DNA of 63,568 bases, the filler included, from Salisapilia sapeloensis CBS 127946 (lineage: Eukaryota > Protista > Oomycota), in the NCBI GenBank assembly GCA_023334545.1. It is 6 parts of 6 records of this genome, joined end to end, with 100 filler letters (N's around TTAATTAATTAA, not from the genome) between each part and the next. Parts side by side here need not be neighbours in the genome. Positions count along the whole stretch, not along the records: positions 34,363 to 54,979 come from JAADVB010000295.1; 5 more parts are not named here. One strand, given 5' to 3'. Below, in pieces: positions 34,535 through 54,089 of the stretch. Position numbers and translations under genes: made by a program. The notes under the pieces are model-generated. The model was not told where the DNA came from and did not search any database. It saw only the letters and a program-made list of their open reading frames with translations. The stretch's first letter is position 1. Every line of letters begins with the position of its first letter.

Positions 34535-34719
34535 GATTTGATATTGGATAGGATTGGTGTAATATATAGTTTGAATGTGTTCGAGGGGGTCAGAGCGTGG
34601 TTTTGGACAAAAAACCTTTAGAGATTATGCTTTTATTATATTTCACGAGGAACACAGCACGAAAATGACAAACTGTAAAATGCATTGAGACGCAAGCAAC
34701 ACGGTGTCGTGCCCATGTC

Positions 34720-37700
34720 TTAGTTCCTACGACCCTTCCGCTTTCCCTTCTTTGCCTCAACCTTTGTCCAGCCTTCGTCCGCAGGCTGCTTCTTGACGGA
34801 CTTCTTGCTCTTCTTTTTGCTGGGCGTCTCGACAGGGCTGAGCGCCACCTCGGTGCCTTTTACATACTGCGTCAGCTTCTTGACAGCTTGCTCCAACTGT
34901 TGCCTCTCGTGCAAAACACTAATGAAGAAGCGCAGACGACATTTGCCTTCCTCCACTGCCGGATGGACGATGGGCTTCACGTTTACGTTCGCCTCTTTGC
35001 TTAAAAACTTGGATGCCTGCGCGGTCGCGATCGTACTTCCAAGCACGACGACAATCACAGGCGCTCCTCGTTCTGTGCGTTCACCAATGGGCAGTCCGTT
35101 CGCCACACACAAGTCGTAAAAGTAGGACGCCTTGTCCTGCAGTTGCTCCGTCCTCTTGCCACCCTCCGATTGCATGAGCTCGAGGGACCGGAGCGCGGCG
35201 GCCGCGTGCGCCGGACTGAGGCCGACACTGAACACGAATCCACCAGCACAGTGCTTGAGGTAGGAGGCCAGGGCCTTGCTACCGAGAATGAAGCCTCCAA
35301 CAGAGCCCAGGGCCTTGCTCATCGTTCCCATGCGGACGTCCACGTCTGCCGGATCGCACCCAAAGTGCTCGACAAGTCCTCTGCCAGTCTTGCCCATGGT
35401 GCCGAACGAGTGGGCTTCATCCAGGAAGAGCATTGCCTTGTATTTTTTCTTGAGTTCAATGACCTGCGGCAGGTGGACGACGTCGCCGTCCATGGAATAC
35501 ACGCTTTCCACAACTATCAGGACGCGACGGTATTTGAGTCGGAGGGAGCTCAGCATGCGCTCCAGCGCCTTCATGTCGTTGTGTGGGAACGGCTGAACAG
35601 TCGCGCCACTCAGCTTTTGGCCCGAGACGCAAGAGTTGTGGTTGAGCGCATCACATAGAATCAAGTCCTGGGGACCCACCAGCGCTTCCAACGTCGCCAC
35701 ATTCGCTACCCATCCGCCAACAAATAGTGTCGCTGCTTCGCTCCGGAAGAAACTGCACAGCTCTCTCTCCAGCGCTTCGTTCACGAGCGTCTGGCCGACG
35801 ATGGGAGAGGAGCTCATGGTGGATCCGTACTCGTCCACGGCGTCCTGCATCGCCTTGTGCACTCTCTTGTCGGATGCATGACCGAGGTAGTTGTACGTGT
35901 TAAAGTTCACCTGTTGCCTCTTTTCTTCCGTCAAGGATTCCAAGAACGGCACGTGCAGTCCAGCGTCGCTAAACTCCTTCATCTGCTGCTGGAGGTACTG
36001 CACCTCTGGGAAGGATTTAATGTCAAAAGTGCTCGCATCCACTTCCTCCAGACTGCCTACTTGCAAGTCGCTCTCGCGCGTCTCTCCAACTTCCACATCG
36101 CCAGTGGGAAGACCAGGCGCATGCGCAAGAGCCTCTGGAGTCTCGAACTGGAAGAAAGCGGCGGGAGGCACGACGCATCCGAGGAATTCGCCCAGCTCCG
36201 AGCTCAGTCCGACGAGAGCCACCGAATCGAGTCCAAAGGAAGACCAGCTAGCGTCCGAAGAAACTTTCTGGCCGACCTCTTGCTCCAGACGCTCTAGCAA
36301 CCACTGCAAGATCTGCTCTGGGCTCTTCTCGCCCTCCTCCGCTTTAGCCTTCACAACTTTTTTCGGAACAGTAGCCTCCACTGACTTGACTGTAGGCTTG
36401 TAAACCAATAAAGACTTGAGTTGTCCGTCCTCATACTGCAGCTTAGCGGCACTGCGTTGGATCTTGCCACTCGTCGTCTTCGGAATGCCTCTCTGTGGCA
36501 GCAAGACCAACGCCTCGCACTTCAGTTGATGCTCACGCAACACTGCACCAGCTACTTGTTGCGCCACACTCTCTAGATCCGATAGACCGTGACGCACTTC
36601 AGCAGCCACTACCAGCACCTCTTCCCCATTCCTTTCGACGCTAAAAGCAGCAGAGCATCCCGGCCGCATGCCCTCATGAGCATTCTCGACGGTGGCTTCC
36701 ACGTCCTGCGGCGCAATGTTCCTGCCTCGAACGATAATCAGGTCCTTCAGCCTGCCCGTCACGAACAGCTCGTCCTTCCTCAGGAAGCCCAAGTCTCCCG
36801 TGCGAAGGTACTCTTGTCCGTTCAGTTCGGCGTGGAACGCCTCCTTAGTTTGCTCTGGACGTTGCCAGTAGCCTTGTGCGACCGACGGGCCGGACACCCA
36901 GATCTCTCCCACCTCGTTCTCCCCCATGGCGCGTCCGTCCCGAACAATCTTCACTTGGAACGTCGGCGCCGCCTTGCCACAGCTGACGAGCGTCATGCCG
37001 TGTCCGTCAATAGCTTTCCTCTGCTTCTCCAACTGTTCCTTGCTAACGTCCAGAATCGTCACTTCCTTGCGCACCATCGGGTCTTGGCCAGTGCACACGA
37101 GCGTCACTTCCGCTAGGCCGTAGCCAGTGTTAAAGGTCTTGGGGTCGAAGCCGCTCTTTCTGAATTTGCTCGTGAAAGCGTCTAGACTCTCCCGTCGGAT
37201 CGGCTCCGCAGCACAAATGGCCTGTTTGAGGCAGCGCAAGTCCATCTTCTCTGCCTTCTCGTCCGTCGTCTTACGAGCCGCCAAAGCATATCCAAAGTTG
37301 GGCGCACAGATGTGCGTCGCCTGGTACGCATCGACGATCCGCATCCACATGCCAGGGTCCTTGATGAAACTGATGGGCGACATGCTGACGCAGCGAGCTT
37401 GGTTGACACACGGCATGATGATGAAACCGACGAGTCCCATGTCGTGGTAAGACGGCAGCCAGCTCACGAGCGTATCGTCCTTGATGATGCTGTCCCACGT
37501 GCGCAGCTGGGCTCGGATGTTGCCATGACTGATCATTATAGCCTTCGGGGCAGCAGTACTGCCGGACGAGTACTGAAAGAAGGCCAAGTCAGAGCTTTCC
37601 AACGCCACTTCCTCAAATTTGTCCTCCAGTCCACTGGCGAGTGCGTCCGTCGAGACCCAAGTCACTCCTTCCGGCCAGTTGCTAGTCTTACTCAGCGTCA

Positions 37701-38298
37701 AGTAGGCTTTGGCCGTCGCCAGTTGGCTCGCCACCTGATACGACCGACACGTCAAGACGCACTTGGCACCAGAATCTTCGACCAGTCTCGTGAACTTTGG
37801 AAGGTCTTTTGCCAATGTGCCTGGGTACGGAGGGTAGACGGGCACAGCCACTGCGCCAGCGTAGAGACAGCCCCAGAAGGCCAGGGCAAAGTCAAGTCCA
37901 GGAGGGTAGCACAGAGCCACACGATCGCCCTTTTGGATACCGTGTTTTTTCTGCAGACACGCTGCCACGCGTCTCGCGGCAGCATCCACTTCCGCAAACG
38001 AGTAGCTCGTGTCCTCTTTTCCTGCGTCATTCAGAAAAGTGTAGGCGAGCTGTTCGCCAGCAGCACTCGCAGCCACATTCTTGAGCTCCTGAATGACAGA
38101 CGTAAAGTCCTCCTTCTTTCCCTTCTTCTTTGCCTTTTTCCCCTTCTTGCCAGTCTTTTTGGCCTGCGTCACCGGGCGCTCCTTCCGGCATCCGTGGTAG
38201 ACGCCGGCAGCCATGGCCGAAGCGGAGACGACGGAGGCTGCCGTGATGACTCCTTCGTAGGAGAGCTGTCCCACGACGTCAGTGATGAGGGAGGACAT
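34720..38298 (-). CDS. Tri-domain fatty acyl-AMP ligase - acyl carrier protein - PLP-dependent alpha-oxoamine synthase (AONS/SPT family)
   Basis: 1192 aa, intronless. FAAL motifs: FQYSSGST..PKAIMISHGN, SWLPSYHDMGL, YGLAE, LRTGDLGF, GRLKDLIIVRGRN..PQDVE, IPKTTSGKIQR. ACP motif FGLDS (Ser about 692). AOS motifs: NFNTYNYLG, DALNHNS, FPHND, VESVYSMDGD, DEAHSFG, GTMSKA (PLP Lys about 995). Hydrophobic N-terminus. Confidence 0.93.
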   Translation of the reverse strand: MSSLITDVVGQLSYEGVITAASVVSASAMAAGVYHGCRKERPVTQAKKTGKKGKKAKKKGKKEDFTSVIQELKNVAASAAGEQLAYTFLNDAGKEDTSYSFAEVDAAARRVAACLQKKHGIQKGDRVALCYPPGLDFALAFWGCLYAGAVAVPVYPPYPGTLAKDLPKFTRLVEDSGAKCVLTCRSYQVASQLATAKAYLTLSKTSNWPEGVTWVSTDALASGLEDKFEEVALESSDLAFFQYSSGSTAAPKAIMISHGNIRAQLRTWDSIIKDDTLVSWLPSYHDMGLVGFIIMPCVNQARCVSMSPISFIKDPGMWMRIVDAYQATHICAPNFGYALAARKTTDEKAEKMDLRCLKQAICAAEPIRRESLDAFTSKFRKSGFDPKTFNTGYGLAEVTLVCTGQDPMVRKEVTILDVSKEQLEKQRKAIDGHGMTLVSCGKAAPTFQVKIVRDGRAMGENEVGEIWVSGPSVAQGYWQRPEQTKEAFHAELNGQEYLRTGDLGFLRKDELFVTGRLKDLIIVRGRNIAPQDVEATVENAHEGMRPGCSAAFSVERNGEEVLVVAAEVRHGLSDLESVAQQVAGAVLREHQLKCEALVLLPQRGIPKTTSGKIQRSAAKLQYEDGQLKSLLVYKPTVKSVEATVPKKVVKAKAEEGEKSPEQILQWLLERLEQEVGQKVSSDASWSSFGLDSVALVGLSSELGEFLGCVVPPAAFFQFETPEALAHAPGLPTGDVEVGETRESDLQVGSLEEVDASTFDIKSFPEVQYLQQQMKEFSDAGLHVPFLESLTEEKRQQVNFNTYNYLGHASDKRVHKAMQDAVDEYGSTMSSSPIVGQTLVNEALERELCSFFRSEAATLFVGGWVANVATLEALVGPQDLILCDALNHNSCVSGQKLSGATVQPFPHNDMKALERMLSSLRLKYRRVLIVVESVYSMDGDVVHLPQVIELKKKYKAMLFLDEAHSFGTMGKTGRGLVEHFGCDPADVDVRMGTMSKALGSVGGFILGSKALASYLKHCAGGFVFSVGLSPAHAAAALRSLELMQSEGGKRTEQLQDKASYFYDLCVANGLPIGERTERGAPVIVVVLGSTIATAQASKFLSKEANVNVKPIVHPAVEEGKCRLRFFISVLHERQQLEQAVKKLTQYVKGTEVALSPVETPSKKKSKKSVKKQPADEGWTKVEAKKGKRKGRRN

Positions 38299-38453
38299 GA
38301 GAAATGGATGACTTGGTCGCTGCGGCTCCGATGGTGATGTGCCAACGGGTGATATCAGATACTTTCTCTATAGAGTGCCATATGACTACCACCTGAGGAC
38401 AGCAGATGCAGGTTACTATTAATTACTCTATCTACCTACGGACGGATACTAGG

Positions 38454-40283
38454 CTATCGCTTGAACAACCGACTAAACTGTGGCCCGGTCGACTTCCCGG
38501 GTGCCTTTGCGCTCATAAAAGTACTACCAGGACGATTAAAGCTATCTGTGCGCTGAGGAATAACAGGCAGATGATTCGTGTGGTAATCGCCCGAGCGAGG
38601 AACGCTTTTACCCCTCGTCGCGACTGATTCCGCTTTCTTGTAGATAGCCGGAAGCTTTGTGCCTCGATTACCAATTTGCATACTCATCTGAGATGCTCCC
38701 ACACTTAAAGCTGCTCGTGCCTGCACCGGCGGCTTGCTCACGCCAGCTCGTGACGGGGCCGTTGTATTGTCTCGACCACCTCCTAAGGTTCTGCCATTAC
38801 TCAAACCACGTCCATGTACTGGCGCTGGACCTCGTGGAGCTCGATTACTAGGCCGTCGTTGTGTATTTTGTCCAAACCCTGCACGCATATTCACCGTCGT
38901 TGGAGCTCTTCGCACGGCCTCCGTCCGGCGTCCAAATTCCTTCTTCATCGTATCAAACTTTTGCATGCCAATGTTCGAATGAGGAATCTTTCTTCCGGAA
39001 GCGGCACCTACTGCAGGAGCACGCACCATCGGCTTCGTAACGTTCCTTCTCGTATTTGTCGACGCGGCCGGCCCGGTCGAGGTTCCCACTCGGCTAGCCC
39101 CTGTCGGCCTCGCTGCATTCGCACGTTTGACACCAGAGGGTGTGTTCATTGCATTCGTCCTTCGCTGGACTGCTGCTTGGCGCTTCTTTGCCATCCAATT
39201 CTTCACAACGAGGTCTTGCTTTTGTTTCTCCATCTCCTCCTGCTTCGCTTTCTCTTTCTTCAAGTACAATCGCTTCTCACGCTCCGTCATTCGACGAAGT
39301 TGCTTCTGCTTACTTTCTGGTACAGACGTCAAAAAGGTTCCGTTCGGTCCTCTTGTTCTCGGAGCTGGCACTCGTCGGTTATTGGTGGCAGGTGCTTTAC
39401 TTCGCACTTTGCTCACAGAGTACACTGTCTGCGATGGTCGCTGGTGCGCACCGATGGTCTTTCGCTTGTCGAATCTGACAGTATCCTTGGCCGTCGATGG
39501 CGCTCGTTCGGTAAAGTCTGTGCTTTCAAGCTGTCGAATACGTTTCTCCAATTCCATTAGTCTGTCTAGACTAGAGATGACAGTCTTTGGGTCCATGGCC
39601 TCTCGCATGCTAGCGCTTCGATACAGTGCTGGATCGTTCTCTTTATTCTTATCTACACTCTTCTCTTTAGCGTCCTTGGGCGGTAAGGAACTCGATCGTT
39701 GCCTCGAATTGAGCTCCTGAAGACCCTGCTTGAATCGAAATCGTCGCAAGTGCATTTCTTCTCGCTGAGCCAACTGCCCCTTGAGCTTTTGCAACTGCTG
39801 GATCTGACGCTCGGCACTCACTTCCATCCGTTCTTCCTTTTCTTTTTCCTTTTGCTGAAATTCCTGGAAAAATGCAGAGTTGACGTTCAAAGGCTTGAGC
39901 TGTTCATCCTCTACAATCTGCTGGATGCGCTGTGTCTGCTGCAACTTGTCGTTTCGTATCGTCACTTGCGCTATTTGCGAGTCCTCGGTCTTTGTCCGAT
40001 TCGTCTTGATAATCGCTGCCTTTAAAGCTGCTTCATTCGCTAACTTGTGCCACTGGAGAAGCTTCATCTCCTGTTGCAACTCCTCTAGCTGGTTCAGGGG
40101 CTTCTGGTAACCTCGCGGCGGCTTCCCTGGGATGAGACTCGCCTGAGCGCTATCTTGCGCAGGGTTCCCATCAGCAGACGTTTGGATGGGAAGATCAGTC
40201 TCTTGGTTTTCCTCTTTGTCCGCCGCTTGCTCATACAGATGCAGCTCCTTGACCCAGTTCGAAAATTCGGACGCGACCGCCAT
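38454..40283 (-). CDS. Hypothetical protein: N-terminal coiled coil plus long basic disordered tail
   Basis: 609-codon ATG-started frame with coherent composition (Q/E/K heptads, then an R/P/A/G/T-rich tail); no family recognised. Confidence 0.75.
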   Translation of the reverse strand: MAVASEFSNWVKELHLYEQAADKEENQETDLPIQTSADGNPAQDSAQASLIPGKPPRGYQKPLNQLEELQQEMKLLQWHKLANEAALKAAIIKTNRTKTEDSQIAQVTIRNDKLQQTQRIQQIVEDEQLKPLNVNSAFFQEFQQKEKEKEERMEVSAERQIQQLQKLKGQLAQREEMHLRRFRFKQGLQELNSRQRSSSLPPKDAKEKSVDKNKENDPALYRSASMREAMDPKTVISSLDRLMELEKRIRQLESTDFTERAPSTAKDTVRFDKRKTIGAHQRPSQTVYSVSKVRSKAPATNNRRVPAPRTRGPNGTFLTSVPESKQKQLRRMTEREKRLYLKKEKAKQEEMEKQKQDLVVKNWMAKKRQAAVQRRTNAMNTPSGVKRANAARPTGASRVGTSTGPAASTNTRRNVTKPMVRAPAVGAASGRKIPHSNIGMQKFDTMKKEFGRRTEAVRRAPTTVNMRAGFGQNTQRRPSNRAPRGPAPVHGRGLSNGRTLGGGRDNTTAPSRAGVSKPPVQARAALSVGASQMSMQIGNRGTKLPAIYKKAESVATRGKSVPRSGDYHTNHLPVIPQRTDSFNRPGSTFMSAKAPGKSTGPQFSRLFKR

Positions 40284-44873: not shown

Positions 44874-47800
44874 CTACAGATCCACTTCCTTGCCACGGGA
44901 GCTCTGATGCGCATACCCCGACTGCGCTGGTGTCACGTACGACTGGTGATTCGACATGGGCGTGCGTTCCTCCTCCATGATAGCCATGCTGCCATTCTCC
45001 CGCTTTTCCAGCGTAAAGTAGCTCTCGTCGCCGTGACGAGCAGCATAGGGGTCACGCGCACTCGGTCGTGTCGAGGTGTCGCTGTCTGGAACCCGTCCCT
45101 GGGCCATGTCAATCTCCTTACTCGTGTACCCTTCCTTCTTGAGCTTCCACGTGCGGTAGAAGATGTACACTTGACGGATCATAAGCGCCAGAAGCACGAG
45201 CGCCTGGAGTCCGACGACAGCAAAGCCAACGCCTTCGCGGAGGTCGACTGGGATGCTGTCACTAAAGCTCATGGCGGACGAGGCGAGGAAGACGGTTAAG
45301 AAGAGCGCCGAGATCTTGATGACGCTCACAAACGTAGATGTTCGGTGGACGAACCGAGTCGGGTACGGCTGCTTGGTCTCCATGTAGAAGAGGAAGGCGA
45401 GGTTCAACGCGATGAGGACGACGATCTGCCAGATGCCATTCACCCACACGAGACCGGTCGTGACTCCAGACAAGAGCGCCAAGAGTAGCTTCGGGGCGAA
45501 GAAGAAGCGTCCTTCGAACTTGTACTGGTCGTATAGAGGTCCGTACTTTGCGTGCACTGGTTTGTCAAAGTGGTCGGCCGTGCCCAAGTCCCGCAGCTGG
45601 TCCTCATGCTTGCGAACAATGTACACTCCATAGCAGATCGTACCGACGCTGCCAAAGAGGAAACAGATGATGGACAGGAAGAGCGAGGCATCGATCTGGT
45701 TGTGGTCGATGCAGTAGCAGAACTGGTACGTGGCCGTCACTCCGATGGCGTACTCGGACAGGATTAGAATCATCATGAGCACACCCACCGCCTTGTCTCG
45801 CCACTTCTTGGCAAAGGCAGCAAAGTCCGACACGAACGGCGCAGCACAGAGCAGCAGTAGACCGTAGGCAACGCCAAGAGCCGCGATGAGAACCAGGACA
45901 CCGGCCGCCGTCAAGTAAAAGAGCATATCTTCTCTCACGCCGATGATCTTGGCGTACTTTTCCATTCCCTGGACTTCAGTCACCTCTTCACTGCCAGAGG
46001 ACCCAGAGTCACTGTCTGCTAGTCGACGACGATTGGCCTCGGCAGCTGACCCGTTCTCTTCCGTGTACGTGATGTTCTTAAAGTTCTCCTGGAACCACTC
46101 CCAGTTCTTGAGGAAGCCAAAGGTCGAAGCACTGTAGTACTTGCCCATTTCGTCCATCAGTCGAGGACGTCGGTCCAGGTTCATCTGCGTCATCATCACA
46201 CCAAACTGACAGAACTCGGCCGTCATGAGCGCAGTGCCAGGTGCAGCAGCAAGACTGGTACCGGCAGCACTGGCCACACCCATGGCGCCAGAGATAGCGA
46301 CGGAAGAGATAGCGGCCGTGCCACCCACGTAGGCCGTACCGATGGCTGTCTTGTCCAACTCGGTCTTCTTCGTACCGTCGGCCCAGTGGTTGTGGTCCTC
46401 CAGACCCTTGTTCTCCGGCACTGTGAAGGCACTGTACTCGGCGTTGTTCGTGTTGCCGTTCTTGGACTCATCGTCTCTGGACAGCATGTTTGAGCACTGG
46501 CACTCAGAGAACGTTCCGTCGCCCTTATAGGCGCACTCTTGGTTGGACTTGAAGTTCAGGTCAGTAAATGGCTGCTTCACGATGCCCGTCGTGTCTTCCG
46601 AAGCAGAAAGGAGAGACAGGAGATCCAGCCCTTCATAGATAGAAGAGTCAAAGCCGTCGTCAGAAGCGTAGTCCCACGTGCCAGTACTGTTGTCGCACGC
46701 AGGGAAGCGGCAAAGAGACATGCAGACGCTCATATCCGTGACGTACATACCGCTGTGGACGCCAGAGTACACGAGGCACTCGGACATACTCGCAGCCTCC
46801 TCTGCATCCAACGGGTTTCCGTTGCACGTGAGACCGAGGTTGTTCCAGGCGCTGTAGAATTTCGCGTCACAAGAGAACTCGATCGCTTCGGACGAGCTGT
46901 CGTCGACAGCCACGCTTCCGCCAGCCGATTCAGATGCGTCAAAAGGCAAAGACCCGACGAGGTTTCCGACAGCCGAAGAGACACCGTCCGTGGTGTTTTT
47001 GACAGTCGAAGCAACTCCTTCCGTGGTATTCTTGACAGTCGAAGCAACCCCGTCCGTAGTGTTCTTAAGAGCCGAAGGGACTTTAGCAACAGTATCCGAA
47101 ACACCTCCTACGGTAGAGGCTGCAGTTGACGCCACGGCGTCCGTAGCATCTGTCGCGCCATCCACCACACTACCGACCGTGTCTGTCGTGTCTTTCAAGA
47201 CATTGCCAGTGACTTCATCCAGCAAGAGATGGCGTAGACGTCGACCGTCACCTGAACCAGAGATAGAATTCGTACCGCCAGCACTATCACTCGACTCTTC
47301 TTTTCCAGAGTCGGAAGACGTAGGTTTCGATTGCGATGAAGACTTCGAGTCTGCGGATGGAGCAGGCGAGGCCGTCGTAGGCGCAGGACTCGTCTTTTTC
47401 GGAGGCGCCGTGATGGACCCAGACGAACCATTGTCGGTACTTTTGCTGTCTTCTTTCTTGCTGTCTTCCTTTTTGCTGTCTTCGTTCTTACTGTCGTCCT
47501 TCTTGCTATCGTCCTTGCTATCATCCTTGCCATCGTCCTTGCTGTCATCCTTACTGTCATCGTTGCTATCGCTCAAACTGCTGCCACGCTTCTTGCTATC
47601 ATCCTTTTGGTCGATAGTCACATCCCCACTGCTGGTGCTCGAGTCCATCGAAGCAGAGTCGAGACCGGCAGACATGTCCATGCTGAAAGAGCCAGATGAG
47701 CCGTATGCGCTGGAACCATCCATTGAAGAGAGACCAGAGGCAGAGCCTGCGTAGGAGCCTTTGGATTTGTCACCCTTCTTGGTCGCGTAGACGTTGGAAG

Positions 47801-48131
47801 CAGTCGGCATCGAATACTTGAACGTGCATGTCGTTCCTCCAGTGGAACCACCTGCAACGCCAGCCATGGACCCAGCAGCACTAGCGATAGAACCAGCGGC
47901 ACCAGCGACGGATCCAACGTCACCAGCATCGACATGCAGTGGGTTACCATTGGCATGGTCATCGGCCTTTGGATGGAGAGGAACCCCATTGGCATGGTCG
48001 GGCGTAGTGGATGCAGAGGAGTCTGCAGCGGGTGTTAAGTTAGTAGTGTCAGTCCGCTGACCAGTCGCGAATGATGAGGAAGACGCGACGACAGCTAGTG
48101 CGACCGCGAGAAGCTTCCCCGTCACGCGCAT
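44874..48131 (-). CDS. Signal-peptide membrane protein: mucin-like/repeat ectodomain, Cys-rich domain and TRP-like (fungal FLC/Pkd2-type) multi-pass C-terminus
   Basis: N-terminal hydrophobic signal, S/T/D-rich repeats, a Cys-rich module, then about 7-8 hydrophobic helices with EFCQF, KYGPLYDQYK...FF and QPY motifs seen in TRP-like membrane domains. Confidence 0.8.
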   Translation of the reverse strand: MRVTGKLLAVALAVVASSSSFATGQRTDTTNLTPAADSSASTTPDHANGVPLHPKADDHANGNPLHVDAGDVGSVAGAAGSIASAAGSMAGVAGGSTGGTTCTFKYSMPTASNVYATKKGDKSKGSYAGSASGLSSMDGSSAYGSSGSFSMDMSAGLDSASMDSSTSSGDVTIDQKDDSKKRGSSLSDSNDDSKDDSKDDGKDDSKDDSKKDDSKNEDSKKEDSKKEDSKSTDNGSSGSITAPPKKTSPAPTTASPAPSADSKSSSQSKPTSSDSGKEESSDSAGGTNSISGSGDGRRLRHLLLDEVTGNVLKDTTDTVGSVVDGATDATDAVASTAASTVGGVSDTVAKVPSALKNTTDGVASTVKNTTEGVASTVKNTTDGVSSAVGNLVGSLPFDASESAGGSVAVDDSSSEAIEFSCDAKFYSAWNNLGLTCNGNPLDAEEAASMSECLVYSGVHSGMYVTDMSVCMSLCRFPACDNSTGTWDYASDDGFDSSIYEGLDLLSLLSASEDTTGIVKQPFTDLNFKSNQECAYKGDGTFSECQCSNMLSRDDESKNGNTNNAEYSAFTVPENKGLEDHNHWADGTKKTELDKTAIGTAYVGGTAAISSVAISGAMGVASAAGTSLAAAPGTALMTAEFCQFGVMMTQMNLDRRPRLMDEMGKYYSASTFGFLKNWEWFQENFKNITYTEENGSAAEANRRRLADSDSGSSGSEEVTEVQGMEKYAKIIGVREDMLFYLTAAGVLVLIAALGVAYGLLLLCAAPFVSDFAAFAKKWRDKAVGVLMMILILSEYAIGVTATYQFCYCIDHNQIDASLFLSIICFLFGSVGTICYGVYIVRKHEDQLRDLGTADHFDKPVHAKYGPLYDQYKFEGRFFFAPKLLLALLSGVTTGLVWVNGIWQIVVLIALNLAFLFYMETKQPYPTRFVHRTSTFVSVIKISALFLTVFLASSAMSFSDSIPVDLREGVGFAVVGLQALVLLALMIRQVYIFYRTWKLKKEGYTSKEIDMAQGRVPDSDTSTRPSARDPYAARHGDESYFTLEKRENGSMAIMEEERTPMSNHQSYVTPAQSGYAHQSSRGKEVDL
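46982..47075 (-). repeat. 33-bp coding tandem repeat (about 3 units) encoding (V)KNTT[D/E]GVAST
   Basis: CCGTCCGTGGTGTTTTTGACAGTCGAAGCAAC and near-identical units recur; each unit carries an N-T-T glycosylation sequon. Confidence 0.8.
47445..47570 (-). repeat. 12/15-bp coding repeats encoding DDSK / KEDSK
   Basis: DDSKDDSKDDGKDDSKDDSKKDDSKNEDSKKEDSKKEDSK in the 44874-48131 protein. Confidence 0.8.
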
Positions 48132-49368: not shown

Positions 49369-49477
49369 TTTTTTCTATCGGTTCAGCTACTACCGTATCT
49401 CAGAAAACCTTATTCAGTCGACAGTGTTCCATTAAATTCGTTTTGTACCGAGAAGAGTGAGAAAAACGCAAAGCGAG

Positions 49478-50899
49478 ATGGAGTCGACGACGAATGGAGC
49501 TACTGCTGCTGCGAACACACCTAGTCTGTTGCGCCGATACGAAGAGTCTTTAACGAGAGCCATCTCCCCTCGGTCCACACGCGGCCTGTCAGATGCAAAC
49601 GCGCCCTTGGCGTCTCCGTCTGGACCTCGAAGCTCCGCGACGGCAGCCCAGGACCCATCTTTGGCTGTTCGCCCCATGTCCCCTCGAGCCGTCTTGAACT
49701 CTCCTCGGAATTTCGATGAGGTCGACCCGCAATCCTTTCCTTTTCTCCATAGGCGAAATCGAAATCAATTAAAATCCGAGAACAAAGATCAGGACGAATA
49801 TGAAGAAAAACTCCCGGCTTCGGATCAAGACGCACAGGTGCAGCTAGAAGACGTCGACACGACCAACACTGGTGCAGACAAGGGGGACGACTATGGAGAA
49901 GGTTGTCTCATTTGCATGGACGAATTCACAGAACGGAGGAAAGCCTATCCACTGCCGTGTACGAGCAACTGCGTCGGTGCCTACGTCCACTACCGATGCA
50001 TCATGGCATGGCTGGGACAGAGCGGAAGCTGTCCGCTCTGCCGAGGTCTGTGCGATCCGCTCGTGCTAGAACCTCTGGAGCGACTGGAGCTGGACGATAT
50101 TCACAAAGTGGCCTTGCAGCCAGTGCCTCTGGACGCCGGTATCATCCGCTGCTATGTGAAGCAGGTGTACCGAGGTTTGTTCAAACAGTACTCATACGAA
50201 CTGTATATGCAGGGTCAGTTAGGGACGCAGGAGGAAGACCGGTTTCTCCTGACGGCCAAGCGCCAAGTCCGGTCCAACATGACTGCCAACTACACCATCT
50301 ACACGGACCGAGAAGGCTCCGAGGATAGTCGTATTGGTCGCATGGGCTCCAACTTCCTAGGCACGTGCTTCACAATGTACGACAACGGCCGAGATCCGCA
50401 GAAATTAGCCAAGGTCCAGGACGCCATTTGCTCGGAAGACGTCGCGCAGAACGTGCTTCAAATTCGAGAAGAGCTCGGATGCGTCACGTACGAGCCCAAC
50501 CGGACGAGTGTCGGACCGCGGAAGATGCGCGTCGTGATTCCAGACGTGGACGAGAGCGGAGGTGCGTCCAAGGTCGTTCGGCCCATGAGTCGGCAGGACC
50601 GACTCGCCAGTCGACTTGCCAACAACGAAATGAAGGACCTCATGCGCTTTGCCAATCGGGAGCCTGTCTTCCGTGAAGACCTGGGCGCCTACTGCCTCGA
50701 CTTTGGCGGTCGCGTGTCAATGGCGAGCGTCAAGAACTTCCAGCTGATCCACACCGAGGACCCTTCCATGGGCAACGTCCTCCAATTTGGCCGAGTTGCG
50801 GACGACACGTTCACCATGGACTTCCAGTGGCCGCTCTCTCCCTTCCAGGCCTTTGCGATCTGCCTCTCGAGCTGCGACACGAAGCTCGCGTGCGTCTAG
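49478..50899 (+). CDS. RING finger - Tubby domain protein
   Basis: CLIC-x14-C-x3-C-x5-H-x2-C-x10-CPLC at 49904-50041. The Tubby domain has IRCYVK, FLLTAKR, SNFLGTCFTMYD, GPRKM, YCLDFGGRVSMASVKNFQL and FGRV...FTMDFQWPLSPFQAFAICLSS. First ATG at 49478. Confidence 0.92.
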   Translation: MESTTNGATAAANTPSLLRRYEESLTRAISPRSTRGLSDANAPLASPSGPRSSATAAQDPSLAVRPMSPRAVLNSPRNFDEVDPQSFPFLHRRNRNQLKSENKDQDEYEEKLPASDQDAQVQLEDVDTTNTGADKGDDYGEGCLICMDEFTERRKAYPLPCTSNCVGAYVHYRCIMAWLGQSGSCPLCRGLCDPLVLEPLERLELDDIHKVALQPVPLDAGIIRCYVKQVYRGLFKQYSYELYMQGQLGTQEEDRFLLTAKRQVRSNMTANYTIYTDREGSEDSRIGRMGSNFLGTCFTMYDNGRDPQKLAKVQDAICSEDVAQNVLQIREELGCVTYEPNRTSVGPRKMRVVIPDVDESGGASKVVRPMSRQDRLASRLANNEMKDLMRFANREPVFREDLGAYCLDFGGRVSMASVKNFQLIHTEDPSMGNVLQFGRVADDTFTMDFQWPLSPFQAFAICLSSCDTKLACV

Positions 50900-52906: not shown

Positions 52907-54089
52907 ATGGCATCGGACGACGACGACTTTTCACTCGCGTCAGACGAGGAGGTGGAGGAGGAGGAGGAAGTTGTATCGTCTTCCAACCCACCTTCGGATG
53001 ATGACGACTTTGTCAGCGACGACGAAATCACGACACCCAAGAAAGCCGCCAAGACGCCACCCAAGAAGCAGAAAGCAAGCCCATCGAAGAAACGCGGTAT
53101 CCAGTCGACTGCAACTCGAGACGCAGACCAGGACGCAGTCGCGCCACCGACGAAGCAGGCCAAGCCATCACCCAAGAAAGCTACCAAGAGCACGCCCAAG
53201 AAGGCTGCCAAAAGCACACCTCCTGCTGCCAAATGCGCATCGTCTACTGTGAAGCAGACAGCAACGCTGCCTCCCTCCGAGGCCAAGAGGAAAGCTCCCG
53301 CTGCATCTCCACCAGCAACAGCTACCACAGAAGCTACTACCAAGAAAACAGTCTCGGCAGATGACGCTAAGAAGCTCGTTCTAGAGTACATGCAGCAGGC
53401 GAATCGTCCGTATAGCGCAGTGAACGTCTGGGAGAACCTGCACAAGTCGATCCCCAAGCCGACGATCACCAAGATACTGGACACGCTCACGCAGAGGTAC
53501 CTTTGCTATCCTTTTTCCATTATCACTCAGTGCTAAGGCCAAAACAGAGGTGACTTAAAGAGTAAGACGTATGGCAAGTCGGTCATCTACTTTCTCAACC
53601 AGGACAAACTGGACGTCATGACCAAGGCTGAGATGGACGGACTATCGAACAAGATACAGGAGGAAGAGGGTAACGTGGAGGCGATCGAGTCGGAGCTGAA
53701 GAAGAAGACGAGTGAGCTGAATCGGTTGCGGACGCAGCTGTCGGAGGAAGAGCTCGAGAAACGGTTGGAGGCGGCAGGAACGAAAGCCGAGGAGCTCCAA
53801 GTAAAGCTCCAGTCGCTCCAAGATCCGAGTCGGAAGCCCATTTCACCCAACCGGAAGGCCAAGCTGAAGAAGCAGTTCGACAAGTACAAGGTACGTTTAA
53901 TGCAGGGTGAAAAGGATACAGAATGTAACAGACTGTGTGCAGAAAGCGTGGGTCGAGCGGAAGCGGTTGATGACGGACGCCATAGACACGATCGCCGACG
54001 GAATGGAGAAGAAGCCAAAAGCGGTGCAAGACATGCTCGAGCTAGAGACAGACGCCTCAGCTGGTGTCAAGACCATGCCTTGTATTTAG
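52907..54089 (+). CDS. HOP2: Meiotic recombination factor HOP2 (TBPIP) with long N-terminal acidic/basic extension, 3 exons
   Basis: VLEYMQQANRPYSAVNVWENL...ILDTL/ GDLKSKTYGKSVIYFLNQD winged helix, a coiled coil, then WVERKRLMTDAIDTI...ELETD. Introns at about 53498-53549 and 53891-53944. Confidence 0.9.

What the first reader, a model, noticed from the sequence alone, without database searches (positions are those of the whole stretch)
34720..38298. Stand-alone FAAL-ACP-alpha-oxoamine synthase: a one-polypeptide route to sphingoid-like aminoketone lipids in a eukaryote
Seen: three intact domains in one intronless ORF. The adenylation domain has FAAL rather than acyl-CoA ligase signatures (QYSSGST, GRN..PQDVE, and a LDVSKEQLEKQRKA segment before LVSCG that fits the FAAL-specific insertion). 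The carrier domain has GLDS (Ser about 692). The PLP domain has DEAH and the SK Lys (about 995), with NHNS where free BioF/SPT enzymes usually have NHAS. Established: FAALs load fatty acids onto ACP without CoA; AOS enzymes (SPT, BioF, KBL, and carrier-linked domains of RedL, PigH, TamD, SxtA) condense an acyl-thioester with an amino acid and release CO2. Eukaryotic sphingolipid synthesis normally uses the LCB1/LCB2 heterodimer with acyl-CoA. Inference: this minimal assembly line makes a fatty acyl-amino acid aminoketone (3-ketosphinganine-like with Ser, 1-deoxy type with Ala/Gly) by a bacterial-style route, possibly acquired by horizontal transfer.
Basis: partly seen in the sequence, partly recalled or inferred. 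Interest (0 to 1): 0.85.

Follow-up and report, generated by a model that had tools for sequence, protein, structure and literature searches.

The report
Oomycete fatty-acid/amino-acid lipid synthase
A water-mould (oomycete) genome carries an expressed, intron-free gene of bacterial origin that fuses a fatty-acid activator, a carrier domain and an amino-acid condensing enzyme, so one protein should build sphingoid-like amino-ketone lipids, and nobody appears to have tested what it makes.

Summary
ORF 34720-38298 (minus strand, 1192 aa) encodes a fatty acyl-AMP ligase (FAAL) with the FAAL-specific insertion, a carrier domain (Ser692) and an alpha-oxoamine synthase (AOS; Lys995, His887, Asp960, His963). 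RNA-run contigs cover exactly this gene, colinear with the genome, at 104-162x against 0-35x beside it.

The neighbours are eukaryotic genes, and the upstream gene is syntenic with Phytophthora cactorum. The same three-domain protein occurs in all sampled oomycete orders (48-62% identity). Elsewhere I found it only in bacteria (31-42% identity, dozens of 50%-identity clusters). AOS, FAAL and full-length trees each make the oomycetes one clade. The rooted AOS tree places that clade inside bacterial diversity, so the already fused gene was probably transferred once, anciently. Oomycetes then added an N-terminal hydrophobic segment and basic tails.

Most likely chemistry: free long-chain fatty acid to acyl-AMP to acyl-S-ACP, then decarboxylative condensation with an amino acid to release a 2-amino-3-ketoalkane. 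The amino acid is unresolved, because the AOS domain passes no curated SPT, BioF, KBL or ALAS cut-off. A biotin (BioF) role is unlikely.

I found no characterisation of the protein in oomycetes or bacteria. Verdict: a real, new variant of a known kind; interest is moderately high.

The parts
34720..38298 (-). Whole coding sequence of the FAAL-ACP-AOS protein (1192 aa plus stop), with no intron
   Evidence: ORF list and translation; Pfam domains; colinear RNA-run contigs
34663..38358 (-). Outer limits of the transcript-sized contigs: about 33-60 nt of 5' leader and 14-57 nt of 3' trailer
   Evidence: Records 1, 4 and 8: 3669, 3631 and 3651 nt, 0 other letters, 0 gaps, depth 103-162 against 0-35 in the flanks
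38104..38298 (-). Oomycete-specific N-terminal extension (residues 1-65): an Ala/Val/Ser-rich hydrophobic segment at 16-34, then a Lys-rich stretch. Inferred membrane anchor with the catalytic domains facing the cytosol.
   Evidence: Hydropathy scan of the window protein, 16 oomycete-clade orthologues and 6 bacterial homologues: 15 of the 16 orthologues show such a segment and none of the bacteria do. pLDDT is below 50 for residues 1-58.
36400..38103 (-). Fatty acyl-AMP ligase domain (residues 66-633), including the SSGST motif and the catalytic Lys612
   Evidence: Pfam; NCBIfam fatty acyl-AMP ligase subfamilies at 370 bits; PDB FAALs at 392 bits; Foldseek TM 0.93 to 7r7f
36985..37077 (-). FAAL-specific insertion (residues 408-438)
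   Evidence: No large gap against the FAAL structures. About 24 residues have no counterpart in E. coli FadD. Modelled as strand-helix-strand (E415-418, H420-426, E435-438), pLDDT block means 88-94.
36094..36336 (-). Acyl carrier domain (residues 655-735); phosphopantetheine site Ser692 at codon 36223-36225
   Evidence: PF00550; Ser692 invariant in 96 sequences; it lies at the start of helix 692-706 in the model
34849..36036 (-). Alpha-oxoamine synthase domain (residues 755-1150): PLP lysine Lys995 (codon 35314-35316), His887, Asp960, His963, Arg1121, Arg1123
   Evidence: PF00155; PDB SPT, KBL, BioF and ALAS hits; separate model with pLDDT 92, TM 0.91 to S. multivorum SPT; conservation counts
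34723..34830 (-). Disordered Lys/Arg-rich C-terminal tail (residues 1157-1192), absent from the bacterial homologues
   Evidence: pLDDT below 50; 16 K+R in the last 50 residues against 3-7 in bacteria

Best explanation
This is a functional oomycete enzyme of bacterial ancestry that acts as a one-protein, one-module assembly line.

- Step 1 (inferred from family membership): the FAAL domain adenylates a free, probably long-chain, fatty acid. Because of its insertion it does not pass the acyl group to CoA.
- Step 2 (inferred): the acyl group moves to the phosphopantetheine arm on Ser692 of the protein's own carrier domain. A separate phosphopantetheinyl transferase must first install that arm.
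- Step 3 (inferred): the AOS domain, a PLP enzyme that should dimerise, binds an amino acid on Lys995-PLP and condenses it with the acyl-S-ACP, losing CO2. This releases a 2-amino-3-ketoalkane, a 3-ketosphinganine-like lipid.
- Downstream (inferred): a reductase encoded elsewhere probably turns the product into the amino alcohol.

The amino acid is unresolved. My split is serine about 0.4, alanine or glycine about 0.3, another amino acid about 0.3.

The gene entered the oomycete stem lineage already fused. It then gained an N-terminal hydrophobic segment and polybasic ends that probably hold it on a membrane. It exists beside the conventional LCB1/LCB2 enzyme.

Shown here: domain identity, intact catalytic residues, conservation, transcription, eukaryotic residence, bacterial affinity. 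Not shown: any chemistry.
For: - Domains and motifs are all present.
- The adenylation domain is FAAL-type, not a CoA ligase: 392 bits to the FAAL structure 7r7e against 113 or less to CoA ligases, an insertion localised against E. coli FadD, and TM 0.93 to the stearoyl-AMP-bound olefin-synthase FAAL.
- Pocket residue Ala301 aligns with Ols Ala229, whose A229I variant is the one crystallised with the shorter palmitoyl-AMP. This position is small in 15 of 16 oomycetes.
- Ser692 and Lys612 are invariant; Lys995, His887, Asp960, His963 and Arg1121/1123 are invariant or nearly so across 96 homologues.
- The AOS fold is confident: pLDDT 92, with SPT as the best solved match.
- Transcript-sized contigs match the gene with no joints and far greater depth than the flanks.
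- The neighbours are eukaryotic genes. GC3 is 0.69, like the neighbours. The upstream gene is orthologous to the one upstream of the P. cactorum orthologue (39% identity, E 4e-100). The Aphanomyces orthologue probably has introns, since its gene span is about 430 nt longer than its coding length.
- The architecture is present in Pythium, Globisporangium, Phytophthora, Peronospora, Hyaloperonospora, Bremia, Aphanomyces, Saprolegnia, Achlya and Thraustotheca.
- The oomycetes form one clade in the AOS tree (97), the FAAL tree (100) and the full-length tree (100). In the AOS tree rooted on E. coli BioF/KBL, that clade sits inside a 99-supported clade made otherwise of bacterial tri-domain proteins and ACP-AOS or AOS-only gene models.
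- In two bacterial lineages a reductase gene overlaps the 3' end of the tri-domain gene: a classical SDR in Nostoc minutum and a 3-beta-HSD/epimerase-type reductase next to P0090. This fits a keto product that is then reduced.
- P. ramorum has a conventional LCB2 (PMC5519370).
Against: - There is no biochemical datum for any member of the family, bacterial or oomycete, in the literature I could search.
- The AOS domain reaches no curated equivalog cut-off: bioF 319.9 of 426.45, KBL 272.9 of 460, SPT 272.6 of 640, ALAS 231 of 338.55. It is about equally distant from all characterised subfamilies, so the amino-acid substrate is a guess.
- The clade replaces the family-wide H-A-S with H-[N/D]-S beside the PLP-stacking histidine. 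Oomycetes further changed two conserved loops: SASRLVSG to SSSPIVG, and GGH to GGW. These changes could mean an unusual substrate.
- The hydrophobic segment of this particular protein is weak (Kyte-Doolittle mean 1.5), so membrane anchoring is not certain.
- The RNA runs are only guessed to be RNA.
- No reductase or other partner gene lies next to the oomycete gene.
Confidence: 0.75

Rival explanations
1. It is a biotin-pathway enzyme. The adenylation domain activates free pimelate, loads it as pimeloyl-ACP, and a BioF-type AOS condenses it with alanine to give 8-amino-7-oxononanoate.
For: TIGR00858 (bioF) is the highest-scoring AOS model in NCBIfam at 319.9 bits. The top Swiss-Prot structural matches are annotated BioF at 30-37% identity. 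Pimeloyl-ACP is the known substrate of E. coli BioF (own knowledge), so the logic is coherent.
Against: - The score is below the bioF cut-off of 426.45.
- E. coli BioF is only 29% identical and serves as a distant outgroup in the tree.
- By phmmer against solved structures, the BioF chains score below the human, plant and Sphingobacterium SPTs (143-157 against 200-219 bits) and level with the other bacterial SPTs.
- tblastn with E. coli BioA, BioB, BioC and BioD found no bioB, bioC or bioD within about 8 kb in 22 bacterial loci (353 kb) or in 4 eukaryotic loci. There was one weak BioA-like hit.
- The genes that do accompany the bacterial homologues are reductases, an MFS exporter and a porin.
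- The adenylation domain is closest to long-chain FAALs, and its pocket residue is small.
- The H-[N/D]-S signature differs from the H-A-S of BioF.
Confidence: 0.06
2. The chemistry is the same (acyl-ACP plus amino acid gives an aminoketone), but the acyl substrate is short, branched, hydroxylated or aromatic. The product would then be a diffusible signal or secondary metabolite, for example a precursor of pyrazines or pyrroles or a CAI-1-like molecule, rather than a membrane-type long-chain base.
For: - The bacterial homologues sit next to exporters and porins: MFS_3 in Pyrinomonadaceae, ABC transporters in Nostoc, BBP7 in 7 of 20 loci, mostly planctomycete.
- The pocket position is large (R, F or Q) in many bacterial members.
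- Altered active-site motifs suggest a non-standard amino acid.
Against: - Oomycete sequences keep a small pocket residue like the C18-binding olefin-synthase FAAL.
- The gene is kept in obligate biotrophs with reduced metabolism (Hyaloperonospora, Peronospora, Bremia) and in saprotrophs and animal pathogens alike. It also appears highly expressed. Both fit a core lipid role better than a niche metabolite.
- The CqsA model scores lowest of the AOS models, at 161.8 bits.
Confidence: 0.12
3. The adenylation domain is in fact an acyl-CoA synthetase, and the carrier domain is vestigial. The AOS would then use acyl-CoA like free SPT, so the fusion only brings two ordinary enzymes together.
For: Database names call the orthologues 'fatty-acid-CoA ligase'. 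Some bacterial SPTs work with acyl-CoA in vitro even when an ACP gene is adjacent (discussion in PMC8895605).
Against: - The FAAL insertion is present and modelled with confidence.
- All of the closest solved relatives are FAALs.
- Ser692 is invariant in 96 sequences that have diverged to 31% identity. A vestigial domain would not be preserved like that.
- The names are automatic annotations, not experiments.
Confidence: 0.04
4. It is not a real gene of this organism: bacterial contamination, an assembly chimera, or a dead relic.
For: The protein has bacterial affinity and the gene lacks introns.
Against: - The flanks carry eukaryotic genes: a Tubby-RING protein, a TRP-like channel and Hop2.
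- There is conserved microsynteny with Phytophthora, and the codon GC3 matches the neighbours.
- The frame is intact, the catalytic residues are conserved, and the oomycete tree is broadly congruent with the order-level classification.
- Transcript-sized contigs cover the gene.
Confidence: 0.01

Closest known systems
Bacterial A-CP-AOS tri-domain proteins (for example Blastopirellula marina A3ZWL3, Microscilla marina A1ZVW4, Synechococcus PCC 7002 B1XHP8, listed by Milano et al. 2013, PMC3870968; here the Planctomycetota, Pyrinomonadaceae and Nostoc loci L001-L073)
   Same: Same domain order and length of the catalytic core; 31-42% identity over about 90% of the protein; the same H-[N/D]-S and S-K signatures; the same invariant Ser and Lys
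   Different: The bacterial proteins lack the N-terminal hydrophobic segment and the basic tails. They keep SASRLVSG and GGH where oomycetes have SSSPIVG and GGW. Some are coupled to a reductase or an exporter gene. They too are uncharacterised as far as I could find.
ACP-dependent bacterial serine palmitoyltransferase systems with separate acyl-ACP synthetase, ACP and Spt genes (Sphingomonas wittichii per PMC8895605; Caulobacter from my own knowledge)
   Same: Same logic: a fatty acid is activated without CoA, carried on an ACP, and condensed with an amino acid by an AOS. A reductase follows.
   Different: Those systems use three separate proteins; here there is one polypeptide. The AOS domain does not reach the curated alphaproteobacterial SPT model (174.7 of 670 bits). 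The activating enzyme here is a FAAL with the insertion.
Eukaryotic LCB1/LCB2 (SPTLC1/SPTLC2) serine palmitoyltransferase
   Same: Same AOS fold and catalytic residues. Human SPTLC2 is the best-scoring solved relative (219 bits, 36-37% identity). Both are probably membrane-bound.
   Different: It is a heterodimer with small subunits and ORM regulation, uses acyl-CoA, and has H-A-S and T-K motifs. Oomycetes have a conventional LCB2 as well (PMC5519370).
Apicomplexan homodimeric SPT of bacterial origin (Mina et al. 2017, PMC5519370)
   Same: It is a precedent for a eukaryotic lineage acquiring a bacterial AOS for lipid synthesis by horizontal transfer.
   Different: It is a free AOS that uses acyl-CoA and replaces LCB2. 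It has no FAAL or ACP and belongs to a different bacterial AOS lineage.
FAAL loading domains of lipid assembly lines (Synechococcus olefin synthase FAAL 7r7e-g; mycobacterial FadD32/Pks13; Legionella and E. coli FAALs)
   Same: Nearest solved structures of the adenylation domain: 37% identity and TM 0.93 to 7r7f, and the insertion is present
   Different: Those hand the acyl chain to ketosynthase-containing PKS modules. Here the only downstream catalyst is an AOS.
Carrier-linked AOS domains in PKS/NRPS lines (PigH, RedL, SxtA; PMC3870968)
   Same: In both, an AOS takes its acyl substrate from a covalently linked carrier domain.
   Different: Those are parts of multi-module lines with KS/AT or other domains and make pyrrole or saxitoxin precursors. 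This protein has no extension module.
BioF (8-amino-7-oxononanoate synthase)
   Same: Same fold; it gives the highest NCBIfam AOS score and the top Swiss-Prot structural hits
   Different: The score is below the cut-off. BioF has H-A-S and G-K motifs. No biotin genes accompany the bacterial homologues.

Membership tests
Fatty acyl-AMP ligase (FAAL) | ANL-superfamily adenylation core with the phosphate-loop motif and the C-terminal catalytic lysine | tested here: met
   PF00501 at 4.6e-67 plus PF23024; SSGST at 244-248 and Lys612 in PKTTSGK, invariant in 96 sequences
Fatty acyl-AMP ligase (FAAL) | FAAL-specific insertion of about 20 residues in the N-terminal domain, absent from acyl-CoA synthetases | tested here: met
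   Continuous alignment with FAAL structures through residues 408-438; about 24 residues unmatched in E. coli FadD; strand-helix-strand in the model, pLDDT block means 88-94
Fatty acyl-AMP ligase (FAAL) | Closer to biochemically defined FAALs than to CoA ligases | tested here: met
   392, 342 and 256 bits to the Ols, Legionella and E. coli FAALs against 113 or less to 4CL, FadD13 and FadD-1. NCBIfam fatty acyl-AMP ligase subfamilies score 370 bits, below their subfamily cut-offs of 600-775.
Fatty acyl-AMP ligase (FAAL) | Rejects CoA and transfers the acyl group to a phosphopantetheine arm | not testable with these tools
   Needs an enzyme assay
Acyl/peptidyl carrier protein | Helical bundle with the modified serine in a (G/L)-D-S motif at the start of helix II | tested here: met
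   PF00550 at 8e-09; GLDS with Ser692 invariant; helix 692-706 starts at the serine. The modification itself is not testable here.
Alpha-oxoamine synthase (fold-type I PLP, CoA-dependent acyltransferase subfamily) | Schiff-base lysine, PLP-stacking histidine, Asp and His that bind the pyridine N and O3', and the C-terminal arginine for the substrate carboxylate | tested here: met
   Lys995, His887, Asp960, His963 and Arg1121/1123 are conserved in 16 of 16 oomycete and 76-80 of 80 bacterial homologues. TM 0.85-0.91 to SPT, KBL, ALAS and BioF structures.
Serine palmitoyltransferase (curated bacterial equivalogs NF047600, NF047599, NF047603) | Score at or above NCBIfam's curated cut-off | tested here: not met
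   272.6 of 640, 243.9 of 500 and 174.7 of 670
Serine palmitoyltransferase | Uses L-serine and gives 3-ketosphinganine | not testable with these tools
   Only hints are available: the best solved sequence match is SPTLC2 or S. multivorum SPT, and the S-K motif is as in the bacterial SPT. H-[N/D]-S differs from the H-A-S of SPTs.
BioF (TIGR00858) | Score at or above the curated cut-off, plus a biotin-gene context | tested here: not met
   319.9 of 426.45; no bioB, bioC or bioD in 26 loci
KBL / ALAS / CqsA equivalogs | Score at or above the curated cut-off | tested here: not met
   KBL 272.9 of 460, ALAS 231 of 338.55, CqsA 161.8 of 428
Modular PKS/NRPS with embedded AOS (PigH/RedL/SxtA type) | Presence of KS/AT, condensation or other extension domains in the same protein or cluster | tested here: not met
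   Only three domains are present. The neighbours are unrelated eukaryotic genes.
Bacterial A-CP-AOS tri-domain family (uncharacterised) | Same three domains in the same order, alignable end to end, and one clade in the domain trees | tested here: met
   31-42% identity over about 90% of the protein; nested in a 99-supported clade that holds the bacterial tri-domain proteins in the AOS tree, and grouped with them at 91 in the FAAL tree

The most novel reading that the evidence does not exclude
Oomycetes run a second, CoA-independent route to long-chain bases or related amino lipids. It was acquired whole from bacteria and is absent from their plant and animal hosts. The route would turn free fatty acids, possibly taken from the host, plus an amino acid that need not be serine, into a distinct pool of sphingoid-like lipids. 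Candidates are 1-deoxy or otherwise non-canonical bases. These might account for unusual oomycete sphingoid structures, and the enzyme might be required for growth or infection, which would make it a lineage-specific target for disease control.
Probability: 0.25. Interest if true: 0.8.

Novelty: new variant of a known kind. Interest (0 to 1): 0.6.

Why it matters
Oomycetes include major crop, fish and animal pathogens, and they are usually described as poor in assembly-line (PKS/NRPS-type) enzymes.

This is a pan-oomycete, apparently highly expressed enzyme of bacterial ancestry that I did not find in any other eukaryote. It should make an amino lipid by chemistry that is well understood piece by piece, yet has never been demonstrated for this fused form in any organism.

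- It gives a direct, testable handle on whether eukaryotes can make sphingoid-type bases without acyl-CoA and without LCB1/LCB2.
- It would assign a first function to a large family of bacterial proteins: dozens of 50%-identity clusters, prominent in Planctomycetota, Acidobacteriota and Cyanobacteriota.
- It is a candidate selective target, because hosts lack it.
- It is also a clean case of an ancient interdomain transfer followed by eukaryotic tailoring: an added membrane segment, basic tails, and probable introns in Saprolegniales.

Tried and rejected
- **Literature.** All ten full-text searches combined FAAL, oxoamine synthase, SPT, oomycete and Pfam names. No paper on this protein turned up. 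Only three were relevant: a 2013 in-silico list of bacterial A-CP-AOS proteins (PMC3870968), a 2021 table naming Saprolegnia and Achlya 'bacterial/plant FAAL' entries without mentioning the AOS (PMC8460268), and the P. ramorum LCB2 statement (PMC5519370). One search was wasted on terms that were too broad. PMC8895605 concerned a free cyanobacterial BioF homologue and does not bear on this protein.
- **Assigning the amino acid.** NCBIfam scores, PDB sequence scores and two Foldseek searches rank the AOS subfamilies differently and within a narrow band, so I make no assignment.
- **Reference SPT sequences.** I could not place any in the tree, because PDB sequences are not retrievable as objects and I did not type sequences from memory. 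The outgroups were E. coli BioF and KBL only.
- **Donor lineage.** The full-length tree puts a metagenomic bacterium (P0090) next to the oomycetes with only 39% support, so the donor is unresolved.
- **Conserved bacterial operon.** Only a BBP7 porin recurs (7 of 20 loci). Reductases and exporters are lineage-specific.
- **Contamination or chimera.** Rejected.
- **Protein Atlas.** It gave only automatic names for the same family.
- **Organism.** I did not identify the species. The protein branches with the Pythium/Phytophthora group, but outside both.

Full report
**1. What is in the sequence**

The piece 34363-54979 holds one long ORF on the minus strand, 38298 down to 34720, starting with ATG and encoding 1192 residues. 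Pfam finds four matches in this order:
- AMP-binding, residues 82-478, E 4.6e-67
- the DIP2-like C-terminal subdomain of adenylating enzymes, 519-628
- PP-binding, 665-726
- Aminotran_1_2, 795-1142, E 3.6e-47

Ser692 in GLDS, Lys995 in SK, His963 in DEAH and His887 in NHNS were checked codon by codon.

**2. FAAL or acyl-CoA synthetase**

By sequence, the nearest solved proteins are all fatty acyl-AMP ligases:
- the Synechococcus olefin-synthase FAAL domain: 392 bits, 37% identity
- the Legionella FAAL: 342 bits
- the E. coli FAAL: 256 bits
- mycobacterial FadD23, FadD32 and FadD28

CoA ligases such as 4-coumarate-CoA ligase, FadD13 and Archaeoglobus FadD-1 score 113 bits or less.

I fetched E. 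coli FadD, a true acyl-CoA synthetase, and aligned it with the window protein, other oomycete orthologues and bacterial FAALs. FadD has about 24 fewer residues in exactly this place. Some oomycete orthologues have an even longer insert.

An AlphaFold model built on 96 homologues has mean pLDDT 85.3. It folds the insert as strand-helix-strand, with pLDDT block means of 88-94. Its best structural match is the olefin-synthase FAAL bound to stearoyl-adenylate, with TM 0.93 by target.

One detail bears on chain length. The olefin-synthase variant A229I is the one crystallised with palmitoyl- rather than stearoyl-adenylate (entry titles; sequences). The aligned residue here is Ala301. That position is small in 15 of 16 oomycete sequences but often Arg, Phe or Gln in bacterial homologues. 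This is weak evidence that the oomycete enzymes accept long chains.

**3. Carrier and PLP domains**

In a 96-sequence alignment that spans 31-62% identity to the window protein, Ser692 and the adenylation Lys612 are invariant. Lys995, His887, Asp960 and His963 are conserved in 90% or more of sequences. Ser692 sits at the start of a helix, as expected for a phosphopantetheine site.

A separate model of residues 770-1150 has pLDDT 92. It superposes on Sphingobacterium SPT, human SPTLC2, KBL, ALAS and BioF with TM 0.85-0.91.

No substrate assignment is possible from these data:
- By phmmer, the SPTs score highest: SPTLC2 219 bits, S. multivorum SPT 211, KBL 181, BioF 157 or less.
- NCBIfam ranks its bioF model first, and every curated cut-off is missed: bioF 319.9 of 426.45, KBL 272.9 of 460, SPT 272.6 of 640, ALAS 231 of 338.55, CqsA 161.8 of 428.
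- Foldseek places BioF, SPT, KBL and ALAS within a narrow band.

The domain therefore belongs to a separate AOS subfamily.

That subfamily has a signature. The residue after the PLP-stacking histidine is Asn or Asp in 78 of 80 members. It is Ala in E. coli BioF and KBL and in human SPTLC2 and S. multivorum SPT. The residue before the Schiff-base lysine is Ser throughout the clade, as in the bacterial SPT; it is Gly in BioF and KBL and Thr in SPTLC2.

Oomycetes alone changed two further conserved loops: SASRLVSG to SSSPIVG, and GGH to GGW. I cannot say what these changes do. They are the best leads to the substrate.

**4. A real, expressed gene of a eukaryote**

- The other ORFs of the piece encode a sugar transporter, an amino-acid permease, a TRP-like channel, a RING-Tubby protein and a Hop2 homologue.
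- GC3 of the gene (0.69) matches its neighbours (0.53-0.68).
- The gene immediately upstream (38454-40283, same strand) encodes a coiled-coil-looking protein with no Pfam match. It is orthologous (39% identity, E 4e-100) to the gene immediately upstream of the Phytophthora cactorum orthologue. The locus has therefore been inherited vertically since before those lineages split.
- The Aphanomyces invadans orthologue spans 4157 nt for 1242 codons, about 430 nt more than its coding length, so it has probably gained introns.

Four runs (kind guessed as RNA) hold all sampled words of the gene. In the three that were laid, single contigs of 3631-3669 nt cover 34663/34706 to 38331/38358 with no mismatch, gap or joint. 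Their depth is 104-162, while the flanking intergenic DNA and the upstream gene show 0-35. Contigs that stop at the gene's ends, with a step in depth, are what a transcriptome gives and not what genomic DNA gives. The first ATG inside these contigs is the ORF start.

**5. Distribution and origin**

The same architecture is found at 48-62% identity in these genera:
- Pythium, Globisporangium, Phytophthora (many species), Nothophytophthora
- Peronospora, Hyaloperonospora, Bremia
- Aphanomyces, Saprolegnia, Achlya, Thraustotheca

Some gene models are split or truncated. Three unnamed metagenomic relatives branch at the base of the oomycetes, and a fourth (P0127) is the clade's sister; the two contigs I inspected, those of P0039 and P0127, carry eukaryotic genes.

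The next-best hits, at 42% identity or less, are bacterial proteins of 1070-1200 residues with the same three domains. An exhaustive HMMER search collapses the oomycetes into one 50%-identity cluster. It lists dozens of bacterial tri-domain clusters among the top 150 of 20,628 hits at E 1e-30 or better. In species-representative genomes, the full-length matches are in Planctomycetota, Pyrinomonadaceae, Nostoc minutum and Limnothrix.

Three trees were built:
- **AOS domain**, rooted on E. coli BioF and KBL: oomycetes are one clade (SH-aLRT 97), inside a 99-supported clade made otherwise of bacterial tri-domain proteins and ACP-AOS or AOS-only gene models; further free bacterial AOS proteins lie outside.
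- **FAAL domain**: oomycetes are one clade (100) that groups with bacterial tri-domain proteins (91).
- **Full length**: a long oomycete stem (0.84 substitutions per site) and an unresolved sister.

Both domains tell the same story, so the fusion predates the transfer. The direction is from bacteria into the oomycete stem lineage. The donor is not resolved.

After the transfer, oomycetes added a hydrophobic Ala/Val/Ser-rich segment at about residues 8-35, followed by a Lys/Arg-rich stretch, and a basic or low-complexity C-terminal tail. Bacterial homologues have none of these. The model shows these parts as disordered. By the positive-inside rule, I infer a membrane anchor with the catalytic domains in the cytosol. 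For this particular protein the segment is only moderately hydrophobic.

**6. What the bacterial relatives suggest**

There is no conserved operon. Three lineage-specific associations stand out:
- In Nostoc minutum a short-chain dehydrogenase gene overlaps the 3' end of the tri-domain gene, followed by LtrA and ABC-transporter genes.
- In the bacterium carrying P0090, the nearest non-oomycete neighbour in the trees, a 3-beta-HSD/epimerase-type reductase overlaps the 3' end.
- In Pyrinomonadaceae an MFS_3 exporter follows the gene, and 7 of 20 loci, mostly planctomycete, have a BBP7 porin gene nearby, convergent in most.

A coupled ketoreductase is what one expects if the product is a 3-keto amine that is then reduced, as in sphinganine synthesis.

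I tested the biotin alternative directly. tblastn with E. coli BioA, BioB, BioC and BioD against 22 bacterial loci (353 kb) and four eukaryotic loci found no bioB, bioC or bioD, and one weak BioA-like hit.

**7. Mechanism**

1. The FAAL adenylates a free fatty acid.
2. The acyl group is transferred to the phosphopantetheine arm on Ser692.
3. The AOS domain condenses the thioester with a PLP-bound amino acid, with loss of CO2, and so releases a 2-amino-3-ketoalkane.

The protein needs a separate phosphopantetheinyl transferase. It should work as a dimer, because AOS active sites lie at a dimer interface (established for the family; not tested here). Each of these steps is inferred from family membership; none is shown.

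Phytophthora ramorum is reported to have a conventional LCB2 (PMC5519370). This enzyme is therefore additional to the standard route, not a replacement for it.

**8. Comparison with what is known, and novelty**

- The bacterial architecture was listed in silico in 2013 for Blastopirellula, Microscilla and Synechococcus PCC 7002, without a product (PMC3870968).
- A 2021 survey of FAALs lists Saprolegnia and Achlya entries as 'bacterial/plant FAAL' and does not mention the AOS domain (PMC8460268).
- Databases name the orthologues 'fatty-acid-CoA ligase', 'polyketide synthase', '4-hydroxyphenylalkanoate adenylyltransferase' or hypothetical. These names are automatic and mutually inconsistent.
- I found no experimental work on any member.

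The chemistry of each domain is textbook. The logic is known from bacterial systems with separate acyl-ACP synthetase, ACP and Spt, and from carrier-linked AOS domains of PKS lines. I therefore rate this a new variant of a known kind: a fused, membrane-tailored, pan-oomycete form of bacterial ancestry with an unknown product.

**9. Limits**

- The amino acid, the chain length and the fate of the product are unknown.
- The trees lack characterised SPT references, because only E. coli sequences could be fetched as objects.
- The trees used the quick search, with SH-aLRT support only.
- The RNA nature of the runs is a guess by the tool, although the contig boundaries support it.
- The species was not identified.

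Noticed in passing
window 38454-40283 (-): A 609-aa protein with no Pfam match, rich in Gln, Lys, Glu and Arg and looking like coiled coil plus disordered sequence. It lies immediately upstream of the FAAL-ACP-AOS gene on the same strand. Its orthologue (39% identity, E 4e-100) holds the same position in Phytophthora cactorum (L085 7821-9770). Depth in the RNA runs is low (about 2-5).
   Followed up: partly
window 49457-50899 (+): The ORF combines a RING-H2 finger (residues 150-196) with a C-terminal Tubby domain (220-475). Nearby are a 1085-aa TRP-like channel (44874-48131, minus strand) and a Hop2/TBPIP homologue (52907-53536).
   Followed up: no
window 35632-35640 (-), residues 887-889; alignment: H-[N/D]-S replaces the family-wide H-A-S next to the PLP-stacking histidine in 78 of 80 members of this AOS clade, bacterial and oomycete. 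The two exceptions are the long-branch tri-domain proteins of L016 and L018. Oomycetes alone also changed SASRLVSG to SSSPIVG and GGH to GGW.
   Followed up: partly
L004 11368-12204 (+); L088 12273-13244 (+); L002 6636-7931 (+); L005 11662-12894 (-): Partners of the bacterial tri-domain gene vary by lineage. Nostoc minutum has an overlapping SDR. The P0090 bacterium has an overlapping 3-beta-HSD/epimerase-type reductase. Pyrinomonadaceae have an MFS_3 exporter. In 7 of 20 loci, mostly planctomycete, a BBP7 putative porin gene lies nearby, convergent in most.
   Followed up: partly
L018 7911-17556 (+), Limnothrix sp.: A divergent tri-domain gene that keeps H-A-S heads a run of same-strand genes: an SDR, a second FAAL, a protein with FAD-binding and epimerase domains, and a family-4 glycosyltransferase. 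This looks like a glycolipid cluster of a different subfamily.
   Followed up: no
L086 10001-14157 (Aphanomyces invadans); P0036/P0043; P0042/P0044; P0123, P0124: The Aphanomyces invadans orthologue probably has introns: it spans 4157 nt for 1242 codons. A. stellatus has two paralogues. Saprolegnia parasitica has a second FAAL-ACP protein without an AOS hit, recorded on a contig of the same length (320,093 bp), and the C-terminus of its tri-domain gene model looks frame-shifted. The Bremia and Peronospora belbahrii models hold only the AOS part, so they are probably split gene models.
   Followed up: no
window 38111-38151: Short pieces (19-39 nt) of other transcript contigs match the Lys-rich coding stretch near the N-terminus and then run on as unrelated sequence (loose ends at 38113 and 38129). 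Other transcripts therefore share a similar AAG-rich low-complexity repeat.
   Followed up: no
P0241 (2624 aa): A protein from the representative library carries the whole tri-domain unit in residues 16-1069, followed by about 1500 more residues. This suggests that some relatives extend the module.
   Followed up: no
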